Below, in pieces: positions 6,218 through 33,813 of a stretch of 64,000 nucleotides of DNA; positions within the stretch are counted from its first letter, which is position 1; each line of letters opens with the position of its first letter. The notes beneath the pieces were generated by a model that saw only the letters and a program-made list of their open reading frames with translations, was not told the origin of the DNA and did not search any database. The position numbers and the translations under genes were made by a program. The stretch covers positions 124,001-188,000 of the IMG/VR virus record IMGVR_UViG_3300032236_000747. One strand, written 5' to 3'.

Positions 6218-6709
6218 ATGTTACTAGATTTATTTCCAACTAAGGTTATTGTGGAAACATTATCAAAAGATATATTTTTAGATCTTGCGGTAAAGTATTC
6301 CTCTAGCGACTCTAAAGATTGGAAAGATTTGCTCGCAGATGATTTAATGATAACAAATATAATGTCTACCTACTATGAAGGAAAATACATTATATGCGAC
6401 GGATGGGTTAGAAGCGGCCATAACAGTTTTAATATTCATTGCGATAACCATTACGGTAATCAATTTGTTTGTATTGTTCAACTGTTTGGAGATCAACAAT
6501 CCGGAGGCGAGCTAGTGTTATATGATCCTTCTTGGAGAAATCCTCAGTGGATGTCTGATAACAAACAAGCAGATTCGATAACACATGTGGTTCCATTTAT
6601 ACCAGGACAGGTTATCATTTTTCCATCAAACGTGTGGCATAGTGTAACAGAATATTCAGGCAATATATCTAGAATAACACTCAACTTAATGATTAGAAGA
6701 GTTGATTGA
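6218..6709 (+). CDS. 2OG-Fe(II) oxygenase superfamily protein
   Basis: HCD (HxD) ... 'GGELVLYDP' ... 'PGQVIIFPSNVWHSV' ... 'RITL' (distal His and Arg). Confidence 0.8.
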   Translation: MLLDLFPTKVIVETLSKDIFLDLAVKYSSSDSKDWKDLLADDLMITNIMSTYYEGKYIICDGWVRSGHNSFNIHCDNHYGNQFVCIVQLFGDQQSGGELVLYDPSWRNPQWMSDNKQADSITHVVPFIPGQVIIFPSNVWHSVTEYSGNISRITLNLMIRRVD

Positions 6710-8525: not shown

Positions 8526-8822
8526 ATGTATACGGATGACTACGAAAAATTACATCAAGCGTACATAGCAAAGATGGTAGAATACCATAATGCGTATCAT
8601 GCATACATGTACGGCGCTCGCAGCAAGCCTAAAAACTTTGCTATGCGTGTTGTATTGAAGGAACTTTTAAAGTTGAATAAGGCACTAATAGCAGAATCGA
8701 TTGCTGTTAGGAAGAAAAAGATAGAAGCGTATAGCGATACCTATCAAGGACAACGGAAAAATAGCGGAGACGCTAGTAGATTTTACAAAAATGACGTGGA
8801 CACATCAGGGGACAATAGTTGA
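8526..8822 (+). CDS. Small basic helical hypothetical protein
   Basis: 98-aa ORF, co-oriented, overlaps the start of the GIY-YIG gene. Confidence 0.65.
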   Translation: MYTDDYEKLHQAYIAKMVEYHNAYHAYMYGARSKPKNFAMRVVLKELLKLNKALIAESIAVRKKKIEAYSDTYQGQRKNSGDASRFYKNDVDTSGDNS

Positions 8823-9216
8823 AACACTACCAGAGGACTGTGTGGGCTTCGTTTATCTCATTACAAATATGCTGACGGGCAGGAAATACGTAGGCAAAAA
8901 ACTAGCGAAATTCGCGAAAACAACTTATAAAACTAAAACACTTAAAAACGGCACCAAAAAAAGGCAAAAGATTCGCAGCAAGGTAGACAGTGACTGGCAA
9001 GAGTATTACGGTTCTAGTGTAGAACTAACAGCAGATATTGCTAAGTTAGGTAAAGATAACTTTTCAAGAGAGATCCTATACTACTGTAAGAGCAAAGCAG
9101 AAACAAGTTATACTGAAGCAAGAGAACAATTCGATAGAAAAGTTTTAGAATCAACAGATTATTATAACGGACAGATATCTGTTCGTGTACATGGCTCACA
9201 CATTTTAAAGAAGTAA
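8791..9216 (+). CDS. Stand-alone GIY-YIG family nuclease (catalytic domain only)
   Basis: 'GFVYLITN...RKYVGKK...DWQEYYGSS...FSREILYYC...SYTEAREQ...YYN' gives the GIY-YIG hairpin motifs, helical Glu and terminal Asn; no C-terminal DNA-binding domain. Confidence 0.8.
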   Translation: MTWTHQGTIVETLPEDCVGFVYLITNMLTGRKYVGKKLAKFAKTTYKTKTLKNGTKKRQKIRSKVDSDWQEYYGSSVELTADIAKLGKDNFSREILYYCKSKAETSYTEAREQFDRKVLESTDYYNGQISVRVHGSHILKK

Positions 9217-9575
9217 GCAGTAACGGCTCGCATTGGCCAATTTCGAATGCCCTAGACCTGGATCTCGGATCACAGGGACGGAAGACTCTTCGCTGTACAA
9301 GAGCACTCAACTACTACCCGCCAGGATGAAGATCGTAAACGCCACGATTTAGTTGTTTGAAGATATTAATAAGAGCTGAAAAGAGGGATAAAACCCAGGT
9401 CAAAGCATAGGATTGTATCTATGTTTTTGATTGCCGTCAGAATAAGACGTAGCTAGTGGTACAGGCTGACCGCCACGGTAATGCTATAATACAATGTGAT
9501 TTGCGTACTCGGATAATGTCAAGTTTCTTAGCCCTTTCTGGGCTAAGTGTGACCATTGTATCTGGATAATATATT
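9217..9575 (+). ncRNA. Candidate large structured non-coding RNA, family unassigned
   Basis: No co-oriented ORF. Many stems: cctg-gatc/gatc-a-cagg 9257-9276; ctctt/aagag 9286-9303; caacta/tagttg 9308-9355; gatcgt/acgatt 9331-9349; aaagcatag/ctatgtttt 9402-9427; cttagccc/gggctaag 9527-9547; atacaatg/cattgtat 9489-9561. G-U wobbles favour the + strand. Confidence 0.55.
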
Positions 9576-9699: not shown

Positions 9700-10782
9700 A
9701 TGAAGATTTCTCAGTTAGTACAGTTTAGTTTAGACGAAACAACTAAAAATCCCGCAAGAGCTGCTTCTCAGGAAACAGGGCGTAATCTTGCTAGATCTAT
9801 GGCTAGTGGAGGTTTAACTCCAGATCAACTACAAAGATCTATTCAGGGACAACAGTCTAGGCTAGTTAAAACTCCTAACACTGGAGATACTCTAGGACAA
9901 ACAACTCCTCAACAAAGACTAGCTGCACAGAGACAGACTAATGGCGTTGCTCCTGCTGCTCCTGGTACTCAAGTAGTTCCTGCTAATACTCAAGCAGCAC
10001 CCCAAGCTACAAATACTCAAGTAGCTCCTCAAGGTCCAGTTAATCTAGGTGCTGCTACTCCAGATGCTGGAGAAGAAAGACCAGGTAACGACCTTGCTAC
10101 TACTCAAGAACCTGCTGCTGCACCTGCTGAGAAGGGTAAGCTAGCCAAAGCCGGTGATTGGGTCAAAGGTAAACTATCTAATGCTTCTCTACAAGGCGCA
10201 AGTAATCTTATTCAACGTGGTGCTGCTAATGCCAAGGACAACATTCCGGGCATCGCCGGATATGCTAGTGACCTAGTGGGCAACACAGCTCAAGCAGTTG
10301 CTCCGGGTGCTAACAAAGCTATCAGCGCAGTTGGTGACGTAGGTACCAACCTAGCACAAAACGCAAGTAACGTTGCCAGTGCTGTAGGCGGCGGACTAAC
10401 TAAAACTATCGGAGCCACGCTAGGTGGATTTGGTCAAGGCTATCACACAGCACGTCAAGGCAAGAGTTTTAGAGATGCTGCTGGTGGACTACCGGGTGCT
10501 CCTAGACTAGGTGGCCAATACCAAGGTGATCCATATCAAGGTGGAGATACAGGTAACGCAGGTACCCCAACAAGTTCGGGTACAGATCGTCCAGCTAGTG
10601 GCGGTATTGGTGGAGCCATGCGTCAGGCTGCTGGTGTAGGCGGTCAAGGCGGCGGCGAGGGCACTGATGCTATTAGCGATCTAAAAAATAGACTAGGAAG
10701 AGTTGAGAAAGCCATGGGACTAGCTGAATCTAAGAAGCCCCAAGGCACTATGCTTCCTCATGTTAGAAGAAGGGCAGTTTAG
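9700..10782 (+). CDS. Low-complexity Gly/Ala/Gln-rich protein, putative internal head (ejected) protein
   Basis: N-terminus MKISQLVQFSLDE resembles T4 capsid-targeting/gp21-cleaved leaders; late promoter; largely disordered composition. Confidence 0.5.
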   Translation: MKISQLVQFSLDETTKNPARAASQETGRNLARSMASGGLTPDQLQRSIQGQQSRLVKTPNTGDTLGQTTPQQRLAAQRQTNGVAPAAPGTQVVPANTQAAPQATNTQVAPQGPVNLGAATPDAGEERPGNDLATTQEPAAAPAEKGKLAKAGDWVKGKLSNASLQGASNLIQRGAANAKDNIPGIAGYASDLVGNTAQAVAPGANKAISAVGDVGTNLAQNASNVASAVGGGLTKTIGATLGGFGQGYHTARQGKSFRDAAGGLPGAPRLGGQYQGDPYQGGDTGNAGTPTSSGTDRPASGGIGGAMRQAAGVGGQGGGEGTDAISDLKNRLGRVEKAMGLAESKKPQGTMLPHVRRRAV

Positions 10783-19272: not shown

Positions 19273-20454
19273 ATGTCACAATTATTAAATGAAAGATGGT
19301 CAGAGACCAAAGAAGCTCTGCTTGAAGGCCTACAAGGTAACCGCCGTGCTTCTATGCAAGTTTGCTTAGAAAACACACGTAAGTACCTAGCAGAAGCCGC
19401 TACAGCAGGCGCAACAAGTTCTGGTAACGTTGCAACACTTAACCGTGTTATCCTTCCAGTTATCCGTCGTGTAATGCCAACAGTTATTGCTAACGAAATC
19501 ATCGGTGTACAACCAATGACAGGTCCAGTAGCTCAAATCCATACTCTACGTGTTCGTTATGCTGACACTAGTGCTGGTGATGGTATCGTAGCAGGTGAAG
19601 AAGCTCTAAGCCCATTCAAGATTGCTAGTGCTTATTCTGGTAACAGCAATGACACTTCTCCAAAGGCTGCTTCAACAAGCCAACTAGAAGGTCAACCAGG
19701 TAAGCGTATGAGCATTCAAATCTTGAAGGCTCCAGTCGAAGCTAAGTCTCGTAAACTAAGCGCACGCTGGACTTTCGAGGCTGCACAAGATGCACAAGCC
19801 CAACAAGGTATTGACATCGAAGCAGAAATCATGGCTGCTCTAGCTCAAGAAATCACAGCTGAAATCGACCAAGAGATCCTAACATCTCTACGTTCTTTAG
19901 CTTCAGTTGAACAGACTTACGATCAATCGTTGGTATCTGGTACAGCTACATTCGTTGGTGATGAACACGCTGCTCTAGCGATTCTTATCAACCGTGCTGC
20001 TAACTTGATCGCTCAACGTACACGTCGTGGTGCTGCTAACTGGGCAGTTGTTTCTAACCAGGCTCTAACGATCCTACAAAGTGCAACTACTTCAGCTTTT
20101 GCTCGTACTACAGAAGGTACATTCGAAGCTCCAACAAACACCAAGTTCGTTGGTACATTGAACGGCGCAATGCGTGTTTATGTTGACGCATACAAGTCTG
20201 ACACAGACAACAACAACCAGATCCTATTGGGATACAAAGGTGCTAGCGAAGCAGATGCTGCTGCGTTCTATTGCCCATATATTCCGTTGATGTCTTCTGG
20301 TGTTGTTCTTGACCCAGCTACATTCGAACCAGTAGTTGGCTTCCTAACACGCTACGGCTATGTTGAACTAAGCAACACAGCTAGCAGCTTAGGTAATGCC
20401 GCTGACTACTTGGCTAAAGTAGCTATCAATAGCTCAACAGTTAGCTTCCAGTAA
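19273..20454 (+). CDS. gp23: Major capsid protein (T4 gp23-like)
   Basis: 'VILPVIRRVMPTVIANEIIGVQPMTGPVAQIHTLR...VEAKSRKLSARWTFEAAQD...EIDQEI...FYCPYIPL...FEPVVGFLTRYG'. Confidence 0.97.
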   Translation: MSQLLNERWSETKEALLEGLQGNRRASMQVCLENTRKYLAEAATAGATSSGNVATLNRVILPVIRRVMPTVIANEIIGVQPMTGPVAQIHTLRVRYADTSAGDGIVAGEEALSPFKIASAYSGNSNDTSPKAASTSQLEGQPGKRMSIQILKAPVEAKSRKLSARWTFEAAQDAQAQQGIDIEAEIMAALAQEITAEIDQEILTSLRSLASVEQTYDQSLVSGTATFVGDEHAALAILINRAANLIAQRTRRGAANWAVVSNQALTILQSATTSAFARTTEGTFEAPTNTKFVGTLNGAMRVYVDAYKSDTDNNNQILLGYKGASEADAAAFYCPYIPLMSSGVVLDPATFEPVVGFLTRYGYVELSNTASSLGNAADYLAKVAINSSTVSFQ

Positions 20455-20516: not shown

Positions 20517-20588
20517 ACTTGTCCAAAAGGATTGTTGCGGTGCCAACCGCGCAGTGGATAGAACCCACACATTTAAAGGAGAAATAAA

Positions 20589-21131
20589 ATGGCAAAAGGA
20601 ATGAAAATAGCAAAAGGGAATTCGATTCAGATCGATTCTCAAATTGGTCCACAACTAGTAACATGGGCAAACAGCACCAACACTAATACATTTACAGCAC
20701 TTGGTGGTGTAGGTGGTAATCCTGTTGTAGCAGCGCCACGTACTATTCAAGTACACTACAAGACAGCCGCTGGCGTACAAAAGAATGATGGTTTCATTGT
20801 TAAGCAGCGCGGACGTAAACAGTTTGATGTTCAAAGTGTTTCTGGAGGAGTAACATCTCGCACACGTTGCACACTTGTAGAAGGCAGCTCATTAGCAGCA
20901 AATCAAATGTACATTACACTTGGTTATAACGGCGGTGGCGCACAATATGCTTTTAGAATCACTAACAGATATGTTTGGACAAACAGTAGTTCACCTGTTC
21001 GTTATCAATATACACTAGGTCTAAGCGCAGAAGTTGCTTATATTCAAGCAACAGCCGGCGTGGGATTCTATGACTATGAAACAACAACAGCACAATATCC
21101 AGCATTGGCAGTTGTAGAAGCACAAAATTAA
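20589..21131 (+). CDS. Hypothetical virion protein (possible head decoration)
   Basis: 180 aa; own late promoter, SD aaggag and terminator; directly after MCP. Confidence 0.6.
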   Translation: MAKGMKIAKGNSIQIDSQIGPQLVTWANSTNTNTFTALGGVGGNPVVAAPRTIQVHYKTAAGVQKNDGFIVKQRGRKQFDVQSVSGGVTSRTRCTLVEGSSLAANQMYITLGYNGGGAQYAFRITNRYVWTNSSSPVRYQYTLGLSAEVAYIQATAGVGFYDYETTTAQYPALAVVEAQN

Positions 21132-23053: not shown

Positions 23054-23784
23054 TGAAATATACAAAAAGATTAGTCCTTAATCGTTTTAGGCCAACTGAT
23101 AATACCTTTGCTGTTCAGCAAGATGGTACTATTGTTACGAATACAAAGAAAGCCCTAGAAACTCCTTCTGGACTTACTTCTCAAAGACCTGCTGCTCCAG
23201 TAAATGGTGAAATACGATATAATCAAACTATATCTGATTTAGAAGCATATAACATCAGCGGCCAGGGCACAGGGTGGGAAAGAATCAAAACAAATAGACA
23301 AACTCCTGTAACAGCACAAAATCTTGGAGTTGGCAACTATCAAAATACATTGTTTGGACCTTTATCTTATAATGTTAGTACCACTGCTCCTCAAAACGTT
23401 TTAGTATTTGTTGATAACGTATATCAAATTCCTAACACTAACTATACTTTGGTTAGTGGGGCAGGAGCAACTACTTCTACAACACTAACTAGCACTGCTT
23501 CTACAGGATCAAATACATTAGTTGTAGCAACTACTACTAATATATTGCTAGGCATGATTGTTACAGCCAGTGGTGGTCTAGCAAATGGAACTACAGTTAC
23601 AAACATCACTACAGCAACCAGGACAATAACTATTAGTCCTAATACTATTGCTAGTATACCCGCAAGTAGCACCGTAACCTTTTCTGAAGGTGCTGGAACA
23701 TTTGTTAATTTTACTAGTGCTGTGCCAGCTAAGCCTGTGTTTGTGTTACTGGGGCTTGACGGCTACTCTCCTCCTAATAGTTAA
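23053..23784 (+). CDS. Structural protein with fibre-type motifs
   Basis: 'PSGLTSQRPAAPVNGEIRYN' and 'NVLVFVDNVYQIPNTNYTL' motifs typical of phage fibre/baseplate proteins. Confidence 0.6.
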   Translation: MKYTKRLVLNRFRPTDNTFAVQQDGTIVTNTKKALETPSGLTSQRPAAPVNGEIRYNQTISDLEAYNISGQGTGWERIKTNRQTPVTAQNLGVGNYQNTLFGPLSYNVSTTAPQNVLVFVDNVYQIPNTNYTLVSGAGATTSTTLTSTASTGSNTLVVATTTNILLGMIVTASGGLANGTTVTNITTATRTITISPNTIASIPASSTVTFSEGAGTFVNFTSAVPAKPVFVLLGLDGYSPPNS

Positions 23785-23800
23785 TAAATCCAAATATCGA

Positions 23801-23806
23801 TAAATA
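23801..23806 (+). promoter_or_regulatory. Late promoter core TAAATA
   Basis: About 95 nt upstream of ATG 23903. Confidence 0.6.
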
Positions 23807-23811
23807 ACTTT

Positions 23812-23907
23812 GATGCCATGCATTAGAGGCAGAACATACTGTGGTAAACCCGCAATGAAAGGTGGTTATCCGTGAAACTCGGTGGTTTAGGAGCTTGTTC
23901 GCATGGC
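23812..23907 (+). promoter_or_regulatory. Candidate structured 5' leader (cis-regulatory RNA)
   Basis: gccatgc 23815-23821 pairs with gcATGgc 23901-23907; gaaca/tgttc; taaacc/ggttta next to the SD; ggtggtt occurs twice. Confidence 0.5.
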
Positions 23908-26900
23908 TGTAGGTCGTATATCCGGTCCGTTATTACAACAGAATTTATTTCGTGATAATGTACCACTGGCCTTTTATAACACAAGCAGCCAGACCGAGAA
24001 CCCAACCTTATACTTAGATGTTACTGCCGGCTTTGTTGGCGTGCAAACATCATCTCCTGCCTACGAACTCGATGTAGCAGGTACTATAAACTCTACTAAT
24101 CTTCGAGTTATTCCAGGTACAAGTACACTTGGAAACATAACAGTAAACGGCAATACTATTGCTACAACAGTTGGGCCTATAACAGTTAAGCCAACCGGGT
24201 TAAACAATATTGTTTTAGATAGTACTGTATCTGCTACAGGCGTAACAACATTTAGCGCAGGTCTAGAATCAACTACATCGACTGGGGGCACCGTATTAGT
24301 TCAAGGCGGTCAAGGTATCACTGGCAACTTATATGTCGGCGGAACAGGTTCTTTTAATACACTAACATCCCAGTATGCGTCAATAAACGGAGATGTTAAC
24401 TCTTCTGATTTTACTAACGGAACATTGGTAGTAAAAGGTGGAGTGGGTGTTAGCCAAGACCTACGAGTAGGTGGAACTATTTACGGTAGTATTAGTACAG
24501 CAAGTATTGCTAACTTCTATTTTACTGCTACTACTATTTCTGTAGATAATACGCAAACTTCGGGGGTATACTACCCTATATTTGCTTCTACTAGCACCGG
24601 ATTCTCTTATCCTAAAACTAATACAAGATTATCTTATAACGTAACTACTGGTATTTTATTCAGCCCTCTTGCTTATATTACTACAACTACAGAAAGCACA
24701 ACTTCTACAGGCGGCGCATTAGTTGTATCAGGCGGCGCAGGAATACACAGTAACTTGTATGTTGGTGCTACAGCTTATGCTAATACTGTTACTGTTGGAA
24801 ATGTTTTAATAACACCAAACCTATCGGCTACTAATGCTACTGTAACTAAGTTAACCGCAACTAACTTTATTGTATCAGCAGTAACCGCATCTAACCTACT
24901 AGTACAAAATACAGCCACCGTTGGAAGAGATTTAAACGTTGGTGGAAATATTGTTGCTCAAGGTAATATCATTGCCAACGGTAATATTGTTTTAGGTAAT
25001 AATACAAGTACTGATACATTAACTATTGATTCAGAGATTCTCAGCGATCTTATTCCTGCTACTCCTAGCAAATATAATATAGGCTCACAAACAAACACTT
25101 GGGCTAAAAGTTATGTAGACACACTATATTCTAATATATTAGCTAGCCAGACAGGCAATGTTACCATTAATCCTGCTAGCAGTTTATTAGAAATCAATGC
25201 TAACATAAAAGTAAACGGTGACAAACCTTTTGGTACTGCGCCAGTTGTTACAAACGTTTTATATGTAACCATGGATGGAGATGATACCAATGATGGTCGT
25301 GCCCAAGACGCAAGCCGTGCTTGCCGTACTATCGGTGGCGCTTTAAAGAGTCCTTATTACGGTCCAGGCACTAGTATCAAAGTTTCTCCTGGTCATTATT
25401 TTGAAAACAATCCGTTGTTACTACAACCGTATACAAGTATTATTGGTAGTGACTTAAGAACAACTAGTATTGAACCAATCAATAAGACACAAGATTTATT
25501 CCACTTACAAAGCGGATGCTATCTAGCACAGATGCAGTTTTTAAATGGACGTAGTGGATTATTGCCAGGAACATACGCAAATGGTTACAATAGAGGTGCA
25601 TATGCCACAGCATTCCCTCCGCAGGTAAATGGCGTAGCTATTGACGTATACCATTCTCCATACATTCAGAACTGTACAAATCAAAGCGGTCCGTGGTTAT
25701 ATGATGGTACCTTGTTTGTTCCTAACCAAACTATTCAAATACCTAGCGCAGTATCAACTGGTACATGGGCAGGTAGTTCAACATCTATCACAGTAACAGT
25801 TAGCACAGGTACTATTGTCGCTGGGATGAGTATCAACGGTGGTCATCAAAACCCGGGTTATTTTAATGCTCGTACATTATTGCTAGCAAACAAAAAGTTC
25901 ATCCAAGAACAAGTTGTTGCTTATGTAAATCAACAGTATCCGTCATTTAGTTACAATCAGGCCCTATGCTTTAGAGACGTTGGTATTATTGTAGAAAACA
26001 TTTCATATGATGCTGCATTTGGTGGCAATCAAAATAGTGTAGAAGCAGGTCTTGCTTACTGGAACGGAGTAGCCAGTGTTATCGCAGGAGAAATTACACA
26101 AACTGTGGCTGCTATTAACTATATCAATAGTTTAACACAAAAGATAATAGTTAACTCAACTGTAACAAACTTATTGGGCTCAGGCAGTACATATACACAG
26201 GTTATTAATACAGCATTAACTGATGGTAGCATAGCTAGCAATAGCATTACAACTAACATCGGAACTATTGTTAACATTATTAACAATGGCCCAAGCAGCG
26301 CACCTGCAATGTATTATAGCGCAGCAGTTGATAGTAGTTTCTTGAGCGCAGAAGTATTGTTACAAGCAAATAGAACATTTATTCAGAATGATACTATTGC
26401 TTGGATTACAAATACATATCCGTCGTTTGTTTATAATCAAGCATTGTGTTTTAGAGATGTTGGATTAATCGTTGATGCTGTAAGTCAAGATATTATTTTA
26501 GGTGGAAATACAAAAACTATCGAAGCTGCCGTGAGTTATTGGAAGGGTGGTTATCCTCAGGTAGTAGGTCAAGAATCTACGACTACACAGGCTATTAATC
26601 ACGCAAGAGACATAGCACTAAAGATTATCAATAATCAAACAGTTACACCCCAAGCAGGTAATGCTAGTACACAAACTGTTAATACATTCTTTAGTGGAGG
26701 CAATGTTGCTGCTCAAGCCGTAGCAAGAAACTTTAATATTATTACCAGCGTTATAATACAAGGCCCCGCAGTTGCACCTCCTGTATTCCAGGGAGCTTCT
26801 GTATTTGCTCCTACTGGTATATCTGGAGATGATGTAAGAACACCTCCAACAGTATTAAGCGTTACACCTGTATCTGGAAATACGTATAACTTAACTATTA

Positions 26901-29608
26901 GTAGTCCAACAGTAAGTAGCGCAACAAATGCAGCTTTATACTTTGGATATACCGCAGTATTCCCTGCGCAAGACGCAGCGGTTCCTGATCAGTGGCAACA
27001 AAGACGTGTTGATCCTATAGGTGCTATGGGCGGAAGTCTTGTTGACGGTGGTGTTGTATCAAAACGCAGTCCTATTCAATCTTTTGTTTATGATGCGTTT
27101 ACACAAGTTACACAAGGTGGCAGAGGCATTCATATTATTAACAGCGGATACGCACAGTTAGTATCTGTGTTTACTATCTTCTGTTCAACTGCGGTTGAAG
27201 TCGACACCGGCGGCATCGCCTCTATTACAAACAGTAACAGCAACTTTGGTAACTACTGTTTAATAGCTAAAGGCTACGGTAATAGAGAGTTCAGCGGAAC
27301 TGTTTATAATCCAGCTAGCCCTTGGTTTATTACCAACGGTGAATACTATCCTACTGGTTATTTCCCAAACAATGGAAGCGTACTAGTGTTTGTTCCCGAC
27401 ACTGCTAATAGACCACACATAGCACAGTTAATGGAAGTTATACCTCCTCAAGGATACATTAACACACAAGGTTTCTCTGGATTCTTAGGAGCACAGATTA
27501 ACATTGGAACATTAACCACTGGTTCAATAACAATATCAGGAGTTAGTAACTCCGGTGTTTCTATAGGTCAAACAGTATATGTAAGAGACCAATATGGCAG
27601 ATCGGGAGTTGATGGTGTTCCTTATCTTGCCACAGGTACAGTAGTAACTGATGTAAGTTTCCAAACGATTACATTAAATCAAGCTATCTTACAAGGTGGC
27701 GGCGATCCTAATAATAATAATTACTTCAATGTTTATACTTGCGGCAATGCTTATTATACTGTATTAAGTAGTACACCTTACCCTAATCCAATACCTGTAG
27801 GACAGTCAATGATCCCACAAATACAAGGTAACGAAGTAGCTGCTCTAAACTTTATTAGTACATTGACTCAAAAAGTTGTTGCTAATAATACAGGAACACA
27901 TTATTCGACTCTTACACAGACTACAATAGCAGGGGTAGCAGGTGGAGGCAACGCAAATAGTTTCATAACAGGATTCTTCAATACTATTAGTAATATAGTC
28001 ATTAACGGAGTTAACTCTGCACCCCAAGTAGTCACCACTGGGACAGTGCCTAGTGGTTCAGGAAGTGCTATTACATTGATCGAATCTAATATAGAATATA
28101 TTACACAAGAAACTATCTCGTATCTTGCTTCTATTCATCCTTCTGCAAACTATAATAAAGTGAAGTGTGCTAGAGATACAGGCTTGATTGTAGAAGCACT
28201 AATACAAGATTTAATATTTGGCGGAACAAGCCAAAGTACATTCGCAGGTTTACAATATTGGAACCAAGGTGCTCTTACTGGAAATATTCCCAGCGAAATA
28301 ACAACTACTACTGCTGCTATCAACTATCTAAGTATACTAGCTCAAGAAGTTATACAAAATGAAACCGGCGGCACAAGGTATCAAAACGTAGTACAGCAAG
28401 TAATAAATCATATACCTGCTACAGCAGCAGAAGCAGCTATTCTTGCTGCTGATTTTAATGTTATAACCAATATACTAACACACGGAACAGCGGGCGTAAC
28501 TGATAATATTGTAGCTAATGGTTTAACATCTAGCACTGTAACAACAGTTCAAAGTGCTTTCTATATCTTACAATCAAACAAGGCTTATCTAGAAGCAGAA
28601 GTAATAGCGTTTATTAATAATGTATATCCCGGATTTACATATAATCAAGCAACATGCATTAGAGATGTTGGCTATATTATTGACAGCGTAAGTTTTGATT
28701 TAATATATGGAGGCAATAGACAAGCAATACAGAGCGGCGTATATTATTATTCATACAGCACAACATCGTCTGCTATAACAAACGAAATAACACAAACTGC
28801 CTCGGCTTATCAATATCTAGGTCAACTAGTTCCTTATATTATTAAAGGAATAACAACTGCCACTGTTCAGAATAATGTACATCAAGTAATACCATCCTCG
28901 ATTGCTACCGATGCCGAAGTGACGATATTACAGAATGAAATTAATACGATAACTAATATTATAACAAATGGACCTAGCGTAGCAGGACCAAAAGTTCCTA
29001 TAGGTTTAACTGCAAGTACTTCTACATCTGTATTAAATGCTGCCAATGCTCTTATAGCTAACCTTCCATTCTTAAAAGCAGAGTTAATGGCATATGTTGA
29101 TAGTTTCTTTGATCTAGGAACTTATCAAACAAAATGTGCTAGGGATGTAAGACTAATATTACAGCAACTGATTTATGATTTACAAAACGGAGGAAACTAT
29201 AACGCAGTTTATTCCGGATTAAGCTATTGGTCTAGAAACGGTACATACCATTTAGTTAATCTAGAAGAGATTGTAACAGACCCGAACTTATTCCCGGATG
29301 GGTGTGTAGTTAACTTCTATCAACGTAGTTATATTAGTGCGTCTGGTTATACATTTGAATATGTAGGAGCAGGAGTTAACTATGGATCACTACCTCAAGT
29401 GGGAGTAGCAGATCCAGTACAGGCACAGGAAGTTATTATGTTAGATGGTGGAAAGGTATTCTATACATCAACAGACCAAAACGGAGATTTTAGGATTGGA
29501 CCAGAGTTGGTTATTAGTCAAGCAACAGGTGTATTGAGCGGTAGAACATTTACTAAATCGTTGTTTGCTAACCTAACACCGTTTATATTAGCGATTGAGG
29601 CAGGATAA
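23903..29608 (+). CDS. Giant virion protein (1901 aa): fibre-like N-terminus, right-handed beta-helix (pectin-lyase-like) segment and five helical C-x-R-D repeats
   Basis: TGALVV-GG-GI shaft repeats; 'VLYVTMDGDDTNDG...ACRTIGGAL...IKVSPGHYFENNPL' beta-helix cap; repeated 'Y...C.RD.G.I......D...GG'. Confidence 0.8.
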   Translation: MAVGRISGPLLQQNLFRDNVPLAFYNTSSQTENPTLYLDVTAGFVGVQTSSPAYELDVAGTINSTNLRVIPGTSTLGNITVNGNTIATTVGPITVKPTGLNNIVLDSTVSATGVTTFSAGLESTTSTGGTVLVQGGQGITGNLYVGGTGSFNTLTSQYASINGDVNSSDFTNGTLVVKGGVGVSQDLRVGGTIYGSISTASIANFYFTATTISVDNTQTSGVYYPIFASTSTGFSYPKTNTRLSYNVTTGILFSPLAYITTTTESTTSTGGALVVSGGAGIHSNLYVGATAYANTVTVGNVLITPNLSATNATVTKLTATNFIVSAVTASNLLVQNTATVGRDLNVGGNIVAQGNIIANGNIVLGNNTSTDTLTIDSEILSDLIPATPSKYNIGSQTNTWAKSYVDTLYSNILASQTGNVTINPASSLLEINANIKVNGDKPFGTAPVVTNVLYVTMDGDDTNDGRAQDASRACRTIGGALKSPYYGPGTSIKVSPGHYFENNPLLLQPYTSIIGSDLRTTSIEPINKTQDLFHLQSGCYLAQMQFLNGRSGLLPGTYANGYNRGAYATAFPPQVNGVAIDVYHSPYIQNCTNQSGPWLYDGTLFVPNQTIQIPSAVSTGTWAGSSTSITVTVSTGTIVAGMSINGGHQNPGYFNARTLLLANKKFIQEQVVAYVNQQYPSFSYNQALCFRDVGIIVENISYDAAFGGNQNSVEAGLAYWNGVASVIAGEITQTVAAINYINSLTQKIIVNSTVTNLLGSGSTYTQVINTALTDGSIASNSITTNIGTIVNIINNGPSSAPAMYYSAAVDSSFLSAEVLLQANRTFIQNDTIAWITNTYPSFVYNQALCFRDVGLIVDAVSQDIILGGNTKTIEAAVSYWKGGYPQVVGQESTTTQAINHARDIALKIINNQTVTPQAGNASTQTVNTFFSGGNVAAQAVARNFNIITSVIIQGPAVAPPVFQGASVFAPTGISGDDVRTPPTVLSVTPVSGNTYNLTISSPTVSSATNAALYFGYTAVFPAQDAAVPDQWQQRRVDPIGAMGGSLVDGGVVSKRSPIQSFVYDAFTQVTQGGRGIHIINSGYAQLVSVFTIFCSTAVEVDTGGIASITNSNSNFGNYCLIAKGYGNREFSGTVYNPASPWFITNGEYYPTGYFPNNGSVLVFVPDTANRPHIAQLMEVIPPQGYINTQGFSGFLGAQINIGTLTTGSITISGVSNSGVSIGQTVYVRDQYGRSGVDGVPYLATGTVVTDVSFQTITLNQAILQGGGDPNNNNYFNVYTCGNAYYTVLSSTPYPNPIPVGQSMIPQIQGNEVAALNFISTLTQKVVANNTGTHYSTLTQTTIAGVAGGGNANSFITGFFNTISNIVINGVNSAPQVVTTGTVPSGSGSAITLIESNIEYITQETISYLASIHPSANYNKVKCARDTGLIVEALIQDLIFGGTSQSTFAGLQYWNQGALTGNIPSEITTTTAAINYLSILAQEVIQNETGGTRYQNVVQQVINHIPATAAEAAILAADFNVITNILTHGTAGVTDNIVANGLTSSTVTTVQSAFYILQSNKAYLEAEVIAFINNVYPGFTYNQATCIRDVGYIIDSVSFDLIYGGNRQAIQSGVYYYSYSTTSSAITNEITQTASAYQYLGQLVPYIIKGITTATVQNNVHQVIPSSIATDAEVTILQNEINTITNIITNGPSVAGPKVPIGLTASTSTSVLNAANALIANLPFLKAELMAYVDSFFDLGTYQTKCARDVRLILQQLIYDLQNGGNYNAVYSGLSYWSRNGTYHLVNLEEIVTDPNLFPDGCVVNFYQRSYISASGYTFEYVGAGVNYGSLPQVGVADPVQAQEVIMLDGGKVFYTSTDQNGDFRIGPELVISQATGVLSGRTFTKSLFANLTPFILAIEAG

Positions 29609-30009: not shown

Positions 30010-33000
30010 ATGCCAAAAATACTTAGTGGTGCCGTTCTCCAAACAGGTAGTAGTAGTAGTTTTATTACACTATCGGAAGCTCAGCCGGCCCTACAAATTA
30101 CACCAAGTACTGCTACTGGCTTTACTCTTATAGTTAATACTTCTAGTAATGTTGAATATTCTAATATTCTAGGTGATATAACATTTGATGCAGGTAGTCT
30201 TACAAACTATACATCATATCAAGATATTGCTATCTACAATGTAGGTAACGGATATTTTCAAGTATACACTTCTACATTCCTTAATAGTCCTTCGTTAGTA
30301 ACAGACAGTACAAACTCTTTTGGAACAACACAAGGAGCATTTACTGTTGCCGGCGGCGCTGGTATTGGTAAGAACTTATGGGTAGGCGGCTATACAAATA
30401 TTTCAGCTAACATAGCCAGCACAGGTACACAAACTGGAAGTTTAATAATACAAGGCGGAGCAGGTATCAGCGGCGATATCTATCTCGGTGGAAACTTAAT
30501 ATTCACTAATGCTAAACAAGGTACATTAACTGCGGCAAAGATAACTGTAATAGGTACATTTACATCTACATCTACTACAACTGGCGCCATAACTGTAGCA
30601 GGCGGCCTAGGAGTACAAGGTAATGTATACGCAGGAAATATCTACGACAACGGTCGTAGAGTTATTAGTAGTTTAATAGCCGGTAAAGGTATCGCAGTTT
30701 CAACTAGTACAGGACCAACTGTAGTTGTAACCAACACCGGCGTAACAAGTATTAATGCCGGTACCGGTACTGTAATAAGCAGCACTAGCGGTGATGTTAC
30801 TATATGGATTAATCCTAGTGTTACTAATCAAACACTACAACAAGTTACCAATGCAGGTAACAATACTACTAACGCAATATACTTTAACAACCCTACAAAT
30901 GCCGTATCAACACTTACCGGTGGTGCCATATTTGCAGGTGGCGTTAGTATTGCTAGAGATGTATATATTGGCGGAAACATAAACGCTAAAAGTTTAAATG
31001 TTACAAATGCCATAGACAGTACTATATCAGCAAACAACGGTGTATTTAGAACACTTGTTGTAACATCAACAAACTATAGTACAACAACATTTACTAGCAA
31101 TGCTTTGTATGTTGCTGGAGGAGTAGGCGTAGGCACTGATCTAGCTGTTGCCGGCGATGCTGTTATATATGGAAACTTATTCGTTGCCGGAACATATACT
31201 AGTGTTATCTATGAAACTACAGCGATTGCTAGAAGCGTAATAGCATTATCAACGGCATCTGGCCCAGCAGTATTAACAAACGGTAGCGGTATAACTGTAG
31301 GACCTCCTTCTGGAATATACGCAAGTCTATTATTTGACGGAGTGAGTGCTTGGAAGAGCATGGCAAGTGTAGAACCGTCAGTTGATCTAGGTTATAACCT
31401 AGGCACAAGCGGACTAAGATGGGGAACTGTTTACGCAGGTAATGCTGTGTTCAGCAGTGGAGCAAACAGTATCAATCCTCAAACCGGAGCACTAGTTGTT
31501 CAAGGCGGAGTTGGTATTAGCGGAAACTCTGTAATAGGCGGTCAAACATTAATATCTAATGGTACACCGTCTAGTTCAACTGGCACAGGTGCGTTAGTTG
31601 TTCAGGGCGGAGTTGGCGTAGCAGGAAACATATATGCTGGAAATATTTACAGTAACGGAGTATTACTAACCGCAGGTGGTGGTGGTGGTGGCACAGGTTC
31701 CGGTGTAGTAACTTTATTTGCTGGAACTGATACTGCGATTAGTACAGGAACACTAGGTACAACAATATGGAATACCAGTAACCTACAATCTATAACTGAC
31801 AAAGGTAACACAACGGTTAATCCTATTGTTATTACAAACGGTAACAATAGTAATGATCAGAACTCGGGTGCGTTGATTGTATATGGCGGTGTAGGTATAG
31901 GAGAAAATATATTTGTTGGCGGAAGTTCAATACTTAACGGACAAGCTACTAGTATATTATCTACAAATACCTACATATCTGATAATATTGTAGATCTACA
32001 TTATAATGTTAATGATTGGGATCACGATGACGGTAAAGATATTGGATTTAAATTTGATCATTATGCTTCTACAGCAACATCGGGATTTTTAGGAAGAGCA
32101 GATAGCACTGGACATTTAGTTTGGTACAGTACTGGAACTGAAACACCAAGTGGAACTTTTGTTGGCTCGTTTGGTGTATTTGAAACAGGTGTTCTACAAC
32201 TAAACAATACCGGTACAAGTATATATTCACAGGGCGGAATGTCTGTTAACGGATCTGTAAAGATTTTTAACTCTGCAACTATAACAGGAACCATATACGC
32301 AGGCCCGATATATTCTCAAGGCGCACCTATACTTACATCAGCTAACCTAAGCTCTTTTGGTGTTGCTGATATTATCGCAGGCACAGGCACAAGTGTTAGT
32401 ACACAAACAGGTAATGTTACTATTTGGAACTCAGCAAATCTACAAATAGTAACAGGTAACGGAAATACAACAAATAATCCTATTATCATTACTAACACAA
32501 CACCTAGCGTTAGTACACAAACAGGTGCGTTGATTGTATCAGGCGGCGCAGCAATACAGAAATCTTTGTATGTTTCTAATAATATTACAAGCAACTCATT
32601 AACAGCTAATAGTGCTAATATTACTGATCTTTTAGTATATGGAGAAACCATAACCAAAGGACTAGCAGTTAACAGTACAGTGCCGTTCCCTATTAGTGTT
32701 AGTGGATCATATAGTACAACAGGATCAGTATTTGTAAGTAACAGCAATACAGGCACTGATGCCCACACCGGTTATATATTACAAAACGATGTTCATAGTT
32801 TTGTAGAACTAGGAATAAACAGCAGTGGTAGAACTTTTGGACATTATTCTACAGGTTCTGGATATCTATATACAAGTCCAAGCCTTCCTAGTCTTAATAT
32901 TGGTAATAATAGTGTTATAAACTTCTACACACAGGATATAACTTCTCCAAATCCTGCGGCAATGAGCATTGGAAGTACAACTACTACAATCATCAATAAC

Positions 33001-33813
33001 TTGTTTATTGAAGATAACTTTTACTCAAATCATCCTAGCGCAGGATTGATTGTACAGTCAAATGCTAACTCAAGTTATGGTAGTTTTACAATTAGAAATG
33101 CCAACATTGATGGTCAGAGTTATACATTTGATGTAGGCGGAAACAATAGAGCAGGACAAGGCGGAGCAGCTATCAACGAAGGTAGCTTGACATTACGAGA
33201 TGATGTAGCTAATGCCTATAGATTTATTGTTGCCAAAGGCACAGGAAACATTTTAATTAATAAATCTGTTGACGACGGACTACATAACTTACAAGTCAAT
33301 GGCGGCATTATTTCAAATAATTTAGTAGTTACTACAAGTGCTACTATTGCCCAGAGTTTAACTGTAGGAGTTACAACTTTTAACGGGCTAATAACTGTTA
33401 ATACTAGCAGCGTTTTTAACGGATATGCGGTTTTTAACGGTTCAGCAACATTCAACGGGCCCACTGTTTTCAGCGGAACTGTGGTTGTAGGCAGTAGTGC
33501 GCTACAAACTTCGATAACAATGGTAAATACAACGGATCCAACATCGATTGATAGTTTTGATTCTACGTTGTATAGATCTGCAAAAAGTTTGGTGCAGATA
33601 GAAGATGGGAACAGCTTTTACATGGTAGAAGTTGTACTGCTAGTTGACAATGCGGGCACTGTTTATATAAGCCAATATGGTATTATAACAACAGATTCAC
33701 CATTAGGTGATTTCTCAGCTAGCTTAGTAGGAAGATATGTGACATTGTATTTTACAGCATACGAGGCCACAAGTAAACGAATCAACGTAGTTCAAACAGC
33801 AATAGGTGTTTAA
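30010..33813 (+). CDS. Tail/virion fibre protein (1267 aa)
   Basis: Many 'TGAL(V/I)VxGGxGI' repeats; C-terminal 'IDSF...YRSAK..VQI...EV.L......Y.SQYG' domain shared with the next gene. Confidence 0.8.
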   Translation: MPKILSGAVLQTGSSSSFITLSEAQPALQITPSTATGFTLIVNTSSNVEYSNILGDITFDAGSLTNYTSYQDIAIYNVGNGYFQVYTSTFLNSPSLVTDSTNSFGTTQGAFTVAGGAGIGKNLWVGGYTNISANIASTGTQTGSLIIQGGAGISGDIYLGGNLIFTNAKQGTLTAAKITVIGTFTSTSTTTGAITVAGGLGVQGNVYAGNIYDNGRRVISSLIAGKGIAVSTSTGPTVVVTNTGVTSINAGTGTVISSTSGDVTIWINPSVTNQTLQQVTNAGNNTTNAIYFNNPTNAVSTLTGGAIFAGGVSIARDVYIGGNINAKSLNVTNAIDSTISANNGVFRTLVVTSTNYSTTTFTSNALYVAGGVGVGTDLAVAGDAVIYGNLFVAGTYTSVIYETTAIARSVIALSTASGPAVLTNGSGITVGPPSGIYASLLFDGVSAWKSMASVEPSVDLGYNLGTSGLRWGTVYAGNAVFSSGANSINPQTGALVVQGGVGISGNSVIGGQTLISNGTPSSSTGTGALVVQGGVGVAGNIYAGNIYSNGVLLTAGGGGGGTGSGVVTLFAGTDTAISTGTLGTTIWNTSNLQSITDKGNTTVNPIVITNGNNSNDQNSGALIVYGGVGIGENIFVGGSSILNGQATSILSTNTYISDNIVDLHYNVNDWDHDDGKDIGFKFDHYASTATSGFLGRADSTGHLVWYSTGTETPSGTFVGSFGVFETGVLQLNNTGTSIYSQGGMSVNGSVKIFNSATITGTIYAGPIYSQGAPILTSANLSSFGVADIIAGTGTSVSTQTGNVTIWNSANLQIVTGNGNTTNNPIIITNTTPSVSTQTGALIVSGGAAIQKSLYVSNNITSNSLTANSANITDLLVYGETITKGLAVNSTVPFPISVSGSYSTTGSVFVSNSNTGTDAHTGYILQNDVHSFVELGINSSGRTFGHYSTGSGYLYTSPSLPSLNIGNNSVINFYTQDITSPNPAAMSIGSTTTTIINNLFIEDNFYSNHPSAGLIVQSNANSSYGSFTIRNANIDGQSYTFDVGGNNRAGQGGAAINEGSLTLRDDVANAYRFIVAKGTGNILINKSVDDGLHNLQVNGGIISNNLVVTTSATIAQSLTVGVTTFNGLITVNTSSVFNGYAVFNGSATFNGPTVFSGTVVVGSSALQTSITMVNTTDPTSIDSFDSTLYRSAKSLVQIEDGNSFYMVEVVLLVDNAGTVYISQYGIITTDSPLGDFSASLVGRYVTLYFTAYEATSKRINVVQTAIGV

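What the first reader, a model, noticed from the sequence alone, without database searches (positions are those of the whole stretch)
23801..23907. Structured, possibly switchable 5' leader hiding the RBS and AUG of the giant virion gene
Seen: a late promoter at 23801 is followed by a leader of about 90 nt, much longer than most late leaders here. Its first bases gccatgc (23815-23821) are perfectly complementary to gcATGgc (23901-23907); gaaca 23832-23836 pairs with tgttc 23896-23900. ggtggtt occurs twice, 20 nt apart (23861, 23881), and aaacc 23846-23850 can pair with either copy; the second copy abuts the SD (aggag 23889-23893). A ccg/cgg hairpin with a GAAA-containing loop lies between. 'GGTAAACC...GAAA...GG' loosely recalls P2 of GEMM (c-di-GMP-I/cGAMP) riboswitches, but the GACGCAAA element is missing. 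Inference: a translational control element (protein- or ligand-responsive).
Basis: partly seen in the sequence, partly recalled or inferred. Interest (0 to 1): 0.6.

Follow-up and report, generated by a model that had tools for sequence, protein, structure and literature searches.

The report
Conserved pseudoknot leader of phage fibre gene
The leader of this jumbo phage's 1901-residue fibre-like gene holds a strongly conserved RNA pseudoknot plus hairpin that matches no Rfam family and precedes every checked homologue of the gene in uncultured phages, so it is a real but still unexplained control element.

Summary
Taken singly they are chance-level: the fold is no better than shuffles, and the 7-bp stem and the 7-nt repeat each occur in 13-15% of shuffles. 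Comparison with relatives changes the picture.

The same leader precedes all 80 homologues that were retrieved through the protein alone. More than 590 relatives exist in IMG/VR. Across 110 distinct leaders two crossing helices covary without a single unpaired exception, which defines an H-type pseudoknot (window 23840-23867). It is followed by a hairpin, P3 (23870-23882), a short spacer (7 nt in the window) and a strong SD. It is preceded by an ATAAATA late-promoter box and a 5' hairpin, P0.

Its outer stems, which would hide the AUG, are specific to the window, and the SD is not sequestered. GEMM membership fails and no Rfam family matches. A covariance model finds exactly one copy per genome, always before this gene family.

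The most likely function is a cis-acting translation or stability element read by a trans factor. Whether that factor is a protein or a ligand is unresolved. This is a new RNA family of a known kind.

The parts
23799..23806 (+). Late-promoter-like box GATAAATA (family consensus NTAAATA)
   Evidence: The box lies 28-45 nt before the pseudoknot core in 119 of 127 distinct leaders and 9 nt before it in a clade without P0. The search pattern missed it in four leaders that read GTAAATA. An ATAAATA motif is the predicted late promoter of the related jumbo phages CBB and GAP32 (PMC5259590). Nine other box-to-ATG leaders in the window measure 17-73 nt. The transcription start was not measured.
23808..23831 (+). 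P0, the 5'-proximal hairpin. The family-consensus stem is UGCC 23814-17 with GGCA 23828-31. A longer window-specific alternative pairs 23808-16 with 23820-28.
   Evidence: A local hairpin sits at this place in nearly all clades with quite different stem sequences, for example UGCCAA/UUGGCA, UGCUAG/CUAGCA and long GUAAAG-type stems. It is absent in the L013/L017/L091/L096 clade.
23832..23839 (+). Linker ending in the conserved AC (C23839 is invariant)
23840..23842 (+). Pseudoknot helix S1, 5' strand (UGU), pairing with 23852-23854
   Evidence: A4 pair 5-20 reads UA 89, AU 17, CG 4 with 0 unpaired. Pair 6-19 is GC in all 110. Pair 7-18 reads UG 108, UA 2.
23843..23846 (+). Loop L1 (GGUA). The GG is nearly invariant. 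A23846 faces A23868; this position is a Watson-Crick pair in other clades.
   Evidence: A4 columns 8-10 are at least 90% conserved. Pair 11-62 reads CG 12, UA 11, unpaired 87.
23847..23851 (+). Pseudoknot helix S2, 5' strand (AACCC), pairing with G23862 and 23864-23867
   Evidence: A4 pair 14-60 reads AU 105, GC 5. Pair 16-58 reads CG 107, UA 3. Pair 17-56 reads CG 90, AU 15, GU 3, GC 1, UA 1. None is unpaired. S2 crosses S1, which makes the fold an H-type pseudoknot.
23852..23854 (+). S1, 3' strand (GCA)
   Evidence: It follows the S2 5' strand directly, so there is no L2.
23855..23861 (+). Loop L3 (AUGAAAG), the site of optional insertions in relatives
   Evidence: Relatives carry zero, one or two extra hairpins here, several of them with GAAA loops and compensated stems such as AGCCG/CGGCU versus AACCG/CGGUU.
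23862..23867 (+). S2, 3' strand (G, bulged U23863, GGUU).
   Evidence: The bulged base varies among U, C and A in relatives.
23870..23882 (+). Hairpin P3: CCG/CGG plus G23874-C23878, with a U23873.U23879 mismatch.
   Evidence: A hairpin is present in all 110 leaders with five different stems: CCGUG/CACGG, CGGUG/CACCG, GGGUG/UACCC, GGCA/UGCC and GGGA/UCCC. The window carries the weak variant (-2.0 kcal/mol).
23883..23893 (+). Spacer (7 nt, 23883-89) and Shine-Dalgarno GGAG (23890-93). The second ggtggtt overlaps the spacer.
   Evidence: The spacer has no conserved sequence. GGAG is at least 90% conserved. The SD is predicted unpaired with probability 0.82 in the window and a family median of 0.55.
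23903..29608 (+). Gene of 1901 residues: a fibre-like virion protein with a conserved N-terminal domain of about 100 residues
   Evidence: PHROG tail-fibre and virion-structural families match, best E 6e-77. The N-terminal domain is shared by proteins of 349 to more than 3989 residues.
23896..23907 (+).
   Evidence: They are present in the window and form part of its MFE. They are not conserved. The 4-nt-longer SD-to-AUG spacer exists only in the window's clade. In L002 the partner reads gccgtgt, which keeps the pairing through two G.U pairs.

Best explanation
Window 23799-23905 is one member of a widespread RNA family that I could not find described. It forms the 5' leader of a late mRNA. In order it contains an ATAAATA-type late promoter, a 5'-terminal hairpin (P0), and a compact H-type pseudoknot. 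The pseudoknot has S1 of 3 bp and S2 of 5-6 bp with one bulged base, a nearly invariant GGU in loop 1, and an A-rich loop 3 that tolerates inserted hairpins. After it come a hairpin (P3), a short spacer (7 nt in the window) and a strong SD.

Shown: the RNA fold, its strand, its strict linkage to one gene family, and one copy per genome.

Inferred: it acts in cis on this mRNA as a docking site for a trans-acting factor. Bound next to the SD, that factor would set translation initiation, and with P0 it would affect mRNA lifetime. I consider a conserved protein the likelier factor, either of the phage or of the host translation machinery. One candidate is the fibre's own invariant N-terminal segment acting in autogenous control. 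A small ligand is less likely. The window's extra 7-bp pairing of the 5' end with the AUG may add local repression, but it is not part of the family design.
For: Retrieval through the protein alone (pattern MA[VI]GRI[ST]G) gave more than 599 IMG/VR stretches, of which 590 are relatives. All 80 loci that were kept carry the motif.

Across 110 distinct leaders the two crossing helices have compensatory changes and no unpaired cell at the varying pairs. No shuffle out of 500 reaches the observed covariation, and slid controls collapse to 33-56% paired against 86.7% observed.

Pair states change at least 3 to 19 times on a tree of the downstream protein. P3 has five different stems. Loop 3 carries optional hairpins with compensated stems.

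A conserved U.G pair (108 of 110) fixes the sense strand. Covariance model R1 finds one hit in the 354,680-bp genome (72.6 bits, E 7e-16) and exactly one hit in each of 100 loci (43-91 bits).

The pseudoknot core and the GGAG are far more conserved than the spacer between them. The RNA core is nearly invariant, while the N-terminal domain is only 39-58% identical to the window's outside its nearest relative. This argues for a conserved partner.

T4-type phages are known to use translational operators, for example on genes 32, 43 and regA. That last point rests on my own knowledge.
Against: No expression platform is visible. Neither the SD nor the AUG lies in a conserved helix, so an effect on translation is inferred from position only. 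No transcript data exist: no RNA run holds this DNA. No binding partner was identified. A purely constitutive role as stabiliser or enhancer fits the same anatomy. Many covarying sequences are related, and the tree used to count events is short and noisy.
Confidence: 0.5

Rival explanations
1. An orphan riboswitch. The pseudoknot plus P3 would be an aptamer for a host metabolite or nucleotide second messenger, tuning fibre synthesis to the state of the host.
For: The features are typical of aptamers. The fold is a compact H-type pseudoknot with nearly invariant unpaired bases. Peripheral hairpins of variable length sit in loop 3, and some carry GNRA loops. Sequence conservation exceeds that of the adjacent protein. 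The element lies directly before the SD.
Against: It is associated with a single structural gene family and not with metabolic or transport genes. No terminator and no conserved anti-SD alternative is present. No Rfam riboswitch family matches even at E <= 10. No copies were seen among the bacterial loci that were screened, although that scan was truncated.
Confidence: 0.15
2. A constitutive element with no sensing. P0 and the pseudoknot would protect the 5' end against host RNases and/or present the SD for efficient initiation of a highly expressed late mRNA.
For: P0, or the pseudoknot itself in the clade without P0, sits about 6 nt after the promoter box, that is at the predicted 5' end of the transcript. 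The SD is strong and predicted open. No alternative fold is conserved.
Against: Simple stabilisers need structure, not sequence. Here loop bases and junctions are nearly invariant across clades whose P0 and P3 sequences differ completely. Other late genes of the same window manage with leaders of 17-73 nt.
Confidence: 0.2
3. One reading: a switchable long-range helix in which the 5' end pairs with the AUG region, and aaacc chooses between two ggtggtt copies, to hide or expose the start site.
For: In the window the 7-bp outer stem is part of the MFE, and the AUG is predicted paired (unpaired probability 0.0007). In L002 both substitutions in the 5' arm keep the pairing as G.U. Across the family the P0 region is somewhat more complementary to the initiation region than its shuffles are (mean z -0.59, and 13% of leaders below -2). 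In other clades the P0 loop GACCNA matches UN'GGUC of codons 3-5, with N/N' as A/U 43 times, G/C 12 times and U/A once.
Against: The outer stems, the tgttc spacer and the second ggtggtt are absent outside the window's clade. The 5' arm is used by the covarying local hairpin P0. For the window the duplex z is only -0.3. The loop-to-codon match has 11 exceptions and few independent events, and 49 leaders lack GACC, the window's among them. The SD is predicted open.
Confidence: 0.08
4. A self-cleaving ribozyme or RNase processing signal that trims the late transcript.
For: Small pseudoknotted ribozymes are common in phages (PMC10879173, listed). Conserved unpaired purines are present.
Against: No Rfam ribozyme family matches. 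The strand order S1-S2-S1'-S2'-hairpin fits none of the HDV-like, pistol, twister or hatchet topologies, as far as I know them. The gene's own promoter directly upstream makes processing unnecessary.
Confidence: 0.03

Closest known systems
Autoregulatory pseudoknot of the T4 gene 32 mRNA leader (own knowledge)
   Same: Both are H-type pseudoknots near the 5' end of a leader in a T4-superfamily phage, upstream of the ribosome binding site, and both are conserved among relatives. The T4 element is a translational operator bound by a phage protein.
   Different: The gene 32 element is followed by a long unstructured A/U-rich tract for cooperative binding, and it controls an early single-stranded-DNA-binding protein. 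Here a hairpin and a short spacer (7 nt in the window) precede the SD, the gene is a late structural one, and there is no sequence similarity.
Small pseudoknot riboswitches (preQ1-I/II, SAM-II/V, fluoride, guanidine-III)
   Same: They share a compact H-type pseudoknot of about 30-50 nt with conserved loop bases, placed immediately before the SD.
   Different: In those classes the SD, or its pairing partner, is part of the pseudoknot, and the genes they control relate to the ligand. Here the SD lies outside the fold and the gene encodes a virion fibre. No Rfam model matches.
   Same: There is a short local resemblance: GGYAAACC, then a purine-rich loop, then GGUGG.
   Different: GEMM is two adjacent hairpins joined by a tetraloop-receptor contact. 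This RNA is a pseudoknot. cmscan gives no hit at E <= 10.
Orphan cis-regulatory motifs of freshwater metagenomes (Polynucleobacter-1 RF01718, freshwater-2 RF02980)
   Same: They occur in the same kind of uncultured freshwater phage DNA. Polynucleobacter-1 lies in this very window, and freshwater-2 lies in a motif-bearing contig. Both are conserved structured RNAs of unknown function near genes.
   Different: They have different sequences and folds and sit at different loci. The present motif reaches no Rfam threshold.

Membership tests
GEMM / c-di-GMP-I or -II, cGAMP riboswitches | Match to the Rfam covariance model | tested here: not met
   An E-value scan of 23300-24400 gave no hit in the leader at E <= 10. 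Eight other members gave none at E <= 1. The window at gathering thresholds gave none.
GEMM / c-di-GMP-I | Two tandem hairpins with a GNRA tetraloop and its receptor, and the conserved ACGCAAA-type junction | tested here: not met
   Covariation supports crossing helices, not tandem hairpins. The junction element is absent.
Any Rfam 15 family | Score at or near a family's gathering threshold | tested here: not met
   The only hits lie elsewhere: Polynucleobacter-1 at 9225-9358, and freshwater-2 in L078.
H-type pseudoknot (structural class) | Two helices whose strands interleave as S1a-S2a-S1b-S2b, each supported by compensatory changes | tested here: met
   The S1 pair reads UA/AU/CG. The S2 pairs read AU/GC, CG/UA and CG/AU/GU/GC/UA. 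None is unpaired in 110 leaders, and 0 of 500 shuffles reach the covariation score.
Pseudoknot riboswitches with SD sequestration (preQ1-II, SAM-II type) | The SD is contained in, or pairs with, the aptamer's 3' strand | tested here: not met
   A variable spacer (7 nt in the window) separates the SD from P3, and the SD lies in no conserved helix.
Riboswitch (general) | Direct, selective ligand binding by the RNA | not testable with these tools
   This needs in-line probing, ITC or a similar assay.
T4 gene 32-type translational operator | A pseudoknot followed by a long unstructured tract reaching the RBS, bound by the gene's own product | tested here: not met
   P3 and a 7-nt spacer follow the pseudoknot. 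The product is a fibre-like protein, not an ssDNA-binding protein. Binding could not be tested.
T4-type late promoter | A TATAAATA box about 6 nt before the transcription start | tested here: inconclusive
   GATAAATA lies at 23799-23806. An NTAAATA box sits at a fixed distance in nearly all members. An ATAAATA motif is predicted as the late promoter in related jumbo phages. No transcript start data exist.

The most novel reading that the evidence does not exclude
The pseudoknot plus P3 is the aptamer of a new riboswitch class, or the operator of a new autogenous circuit read by the fibre's invariant N-terminal peptide. Through it, jumbo phages would gate synthesis of their receptor-binding fibre on a host signal or on the pool of unassembled fibre. 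In many clades the P0 loop would serve as the effector arm that pairs with codons 3-5.
Probability: 0.2. Interest if true: 0.85.

Novelty: new member of a known kind. Interest (0 to 1): 0.62.

Why it matters
Translational control of late structural genes is little explored. This motif is among the most conserved sequences of a whole clade of uncultured jumbo phages of roughly 330-360 kb. It marks the single gene whose product changes most in length, from 349 to more than 3989 residues, and that product is a fibre-like virion protein that may contact the host. The RNA is short (about 45 nt) and its sequence is well defined, which makes it an easy target for structure probing, ligand or protein pull-down and crystallography. 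It could reveal how these phages dose or time their fibre. It is also a sharp marker for finding this gene and this phage group in metagenomes, and it is a candidate new Rfam family.

Tried and rejected
- The single-sequence fold was not informative (z +1.06).
- Rfam gave nothing at the locus.
- GenBank phages gave no match, either to the DNA (blastn) or to the N-terminal 130 residues (tblastn). No cultured phage could therefore be used as an anchor.
The covariance model scored its 120 loci at 24 bits or less, against 43-91 bits for true members. Absence from cellular genomes is therefore not shown.
- RNAalifold, which handles nested structures only, proposed an extended S1 hairpin (columns 8-16, 9-15, 10-14) that competes with S2. 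Its extra pairs never change on both sides, and its closing pair would leave a 2-nt loop. I treat it as permitted but unsupported.
- No upstream ORF is conserved. The AUG inside loop 3 is missing in many members, and indels in P0 shift the frame.
- A CsrA-type reading of the CAGGAU loop applies only to one form of P3.
- A link to the phage-encoded ribosomal protein bS21 is a lead only. The gene is present in G000 and in 4 of 5 other records of 265 kb or more, but these genomes are related to each other.
- No RNA sequencing run holds this DNA.
- The AlphaFold model of the N-terminal 100 residues was poor (pLDDT 66, pTM 0.31), so it was not searched against structure libraries.
- Complex prediction was not used, because no protein pair is claimed to bind.

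Full report
**Context.** The window is bases 124001-188000 of a 354,680-bp IMG/VR virus record. Its major head protein (19273-20454) is 68-71% identical to those of the Rak2/GAP32/CBB group of T4-related jumbo phages. In that group an ATAAATA motif before structural genes is taken to be the late promoter (PMC5259590). The gene after the flagged leader (23903-29608, 1901 residues) matches PHROG tail-fibre and virion-structural families. It lies in a structural module.

**The observation.** The promoter-like box reads GATAAATA (23799-23806). The distance from box to ATG is 96 nt, against 17-73 nt for nine other box-to-ATG leaders in the window. Taken alone, the sequence proves nothing:
- The MFE of 23810-23925 is weaker than the mean of its dinucleotide shuffles (z +1.06).
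- A 7-bp perfect complement turns up in 15% of shuffles of the leader, and a 7-nt direct repeat in 13%.
- Rfam gives no hit in the leader even at E <= 10.

**Relatives.** The nearest relative (L002, 65% protein identity) has a leader that is more conserved than the end of the upstream gene. An exact 19-mer from the centre of the leader occurs in 45 IMG/VR contigs. All but one lie just before an ATG that opens MA(V/I)GRI(S/T)GPLL.

A looser pattern found many more. Its true hits again all lay before that gene start, and its other hits were coding or chance matches.

To avoid circularity I then retrieved loci through the protein alone. The peptide pattern matched more than 599 stretches, of which 590 are relatives. 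All 80 loci that were kept carry the RNA motif upstream, in more divergent forms.

The downstream proteins share only an N-terminal domain of about 100 residues. Their lengths range from 349 to more than 3989 residues.

**Structure.** I aligned 110 distinct leaders (A4). Two helices that cross each other are supported by compensatory changes with no exception at the varying pairs.
- S1 (window 23840-42 with 23852-54): the outer pair reads U-A in 89 leaders, A-U in 17 and C-G in 4. A U.G pair is kept in 108 and becomes U-A in 2.
- S2 (23847-51 with G23862 and 23864-67, U23863 bulged): the three varying pairs read A-U 105 / G-C 5; C-G 107 / U-A 3; and C-G 90 / A-U 15 / G.U 3 / G-C 1 / U-A 1.
- A further pair (A23846 facing A23868 in the window) is C-G or U-A in 23 leaders.

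No shuffle out of 500 reaches the observed covariation score. Sliding the 3' partners drops pairing from 86.7% to 33-56%. On a tree of the downstream N-terminal domain the pair states need at least 12 changes (S1), 19 changes (S2 closing pair) and 3-5 changes (inner S2 pairs). That tree is short and noisy, so these counts are rough.

The conserved U.G pair shows that the sense strand is the functional one. The fold is therefore an H-type pseudoknot with no loop 2. Loop 1 carries a nearly invariant GGU. Loop 3 is A-rich and accepts zero, one or two inserted hairpins, some with GAAA loops and with compensated stems.

Hairpin P3 follows in every leader, with five different stem sequences. The window has the weak variant, with a U.U mismatch (23870-82). 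After P3 come a spacer without conserved sequence (7 nt in the window), a conserved GGAG and the start codon.

Upstream, an NTAAATA box sits at a fixed distance. It is followed after about 6 nt by a hairpin, P0, whose stems differ completely between clades. One clade lacks P0, and there the pseudoknot begins 9 nt after the box.

**Specificity.** A covariance model built from A4 (R1) finds a single hit in the whole 354,680-bp genome (72.6 bits, E 7e-16). It finds exactly one hit in each of 100 member loci (43-91 bits). A distant homologue (L003, 29% identity) and a weak paralogue elsewhere in the genome (L137) lack the motif.

Screening 120 bacterial loci from a truncated pattern scan gave nothing above 24 bits. 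That leaves cellular genomes essentially untested. I found no description of the motif in Rfam 15 or in the paper library.

Its aaacc/ggtggtt pairing is S2, shifted by one base, and its ccg/cgg hairpin is P3. Its two outer stems are not family features.
- The 5' arm belongs to P0.
- The tgttc lies in a 4-nt-longer SD-to-AUG spacer that exists only in the window's clade.
- The second ggtggtt is not conserved.

In a nested thermodynamic ensemble the window's AUG is almost always paired (unpaired probability 0.0007). The value is 0.71 in L002 and the family median is 0.40. The SD is mostly open (0.82 in the window, family median 0.55).

The outer stem may still act locally. In L002 both substitutions in the arm keep pairing as G.U. 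Across the family the P0 region is mildly more complementary to the initiation region than its shuffles are (mean z -0.59, and 13% of leaders below -2).

In clades whose P0 loop reads GACCNA, that loop matches UN'GGUC of codons 3-5. N and N' pair as A/U in 43 leaders, G/C in 12 and U/A in 1. There are 11 exceptions and few independent events, and 49 leaders lack GACC, the window's among them. I record this as a lead, not as a finding.

**Mechanism.** Four things are shown: the fold, its strand, its position between a late-promoter box and the SD, and its exclusive one-per-genome linkage to this gene family.

What it does is inferred. Its unpaired bases are much more conserved than the adjacent protein, which is 39-58% identical to the window's outside its nearest relative. 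They are also much more conserved than P0 and P3. This points to recognition by a conserved partner rather than to a merely stable structure.

No conserved helix takes in the SD or the AUG, and there is no terminator. The usual riboswitch expression platforms are therefore missing.

I favour a cis-acting operator bound by a protein next to the SD. Autogenous control by the fibre's invariant N-terminal segment is one concrete possibility. Recognition by the translation machinery is another; the genome encodes a ribosomal protein bS21, as do four of five other large motif-bearing records. P0 would contribute 5'-end stability.

An orphan riboswitch and a constitutive stabiliser or enhancer remain live rivals. 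A ribozyme is unlikely.

**Limits.** No transcript data could be found. The host is unknown. Many members are related to each other. The motif's absence outside phages was not established.

Noticed in passing
window 9225-9358 (+): A strong match to the Rfam Polynucleobacter-1 RNA (RF01718): 109 bits, E 1e-22. This is an orphan motif known from freshwater Burkholderiales and from fresh water and estuaries (PMC2864571). Here it sits inside a jumbo phage, after ORF 8791-9216 and about 340 nt before ORF 9700-10782.
   Followed up: partly
L078 2526-2598 (+): An Rfam freshwater-2 RNA (RF02980, 58.4 bits) lies in a contig that also carries the pseudoknot motif at 6230-6299. These phages therefore hold several orphan RNA motifs.
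   Followed up: no
G000:C1:347482-347634 (+), outside the window (locus L339): The phage encodes a ribosomal protein bS21 homologue (PF01165, 43.1 bits, above the cut-off). The same family is found in 4 of 5 other motif-bearing records of 265-356 kb. A possible link to leader-dependent translation was not tested.
   Followed up: partly
window 20517-20588 (+): A second long late leader: 72 nt after a TATAAATA box, before gene 20589-21131. It contains a GC-rich hairpin (GCGGUGCC/AACCGC region). The fold is not better than shuffles (z -0.87), and it was not compared with relatives.
   Followed up: partly
P0 loops of many members (e.g. L008, L029, L146, L169); not in the window: The loop sequence GACCNA is complementary both to UN'GGUC of codons 3-5, with partial covariation of N/N', and to the invariant UGGU of pseudoknot loop 1. 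This hints at a kissing or competing interaction.
   Followed up: partly
P3 of one group of members (e.g. L149, L157, L159): The stem-loop GGCA-CAGGA-UGCC resembles the CsrA consensus binding hairpin (own knowledge), with the SD's GGA about 12-15 nt downstream. The window's form of P3 has no GGA.
   Followed up: no
window 55331-62749 (+) and 30010-33813 (+): There are two further very large structural genes, of 2472 and 1267 residues. The first has repeated matches to virion-structural and tail-spike PHROGs and a short 20-nt late leader.
   Followed up: no
IMG/VR records behind L042, L109, L060, L040: Motif-bearing contigs of about 150-166 kb are rated only 42-46% complete. This suggests that most carriers of the motif are jumbo phages of roughly 330-360 kb.
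   Followed up: partly
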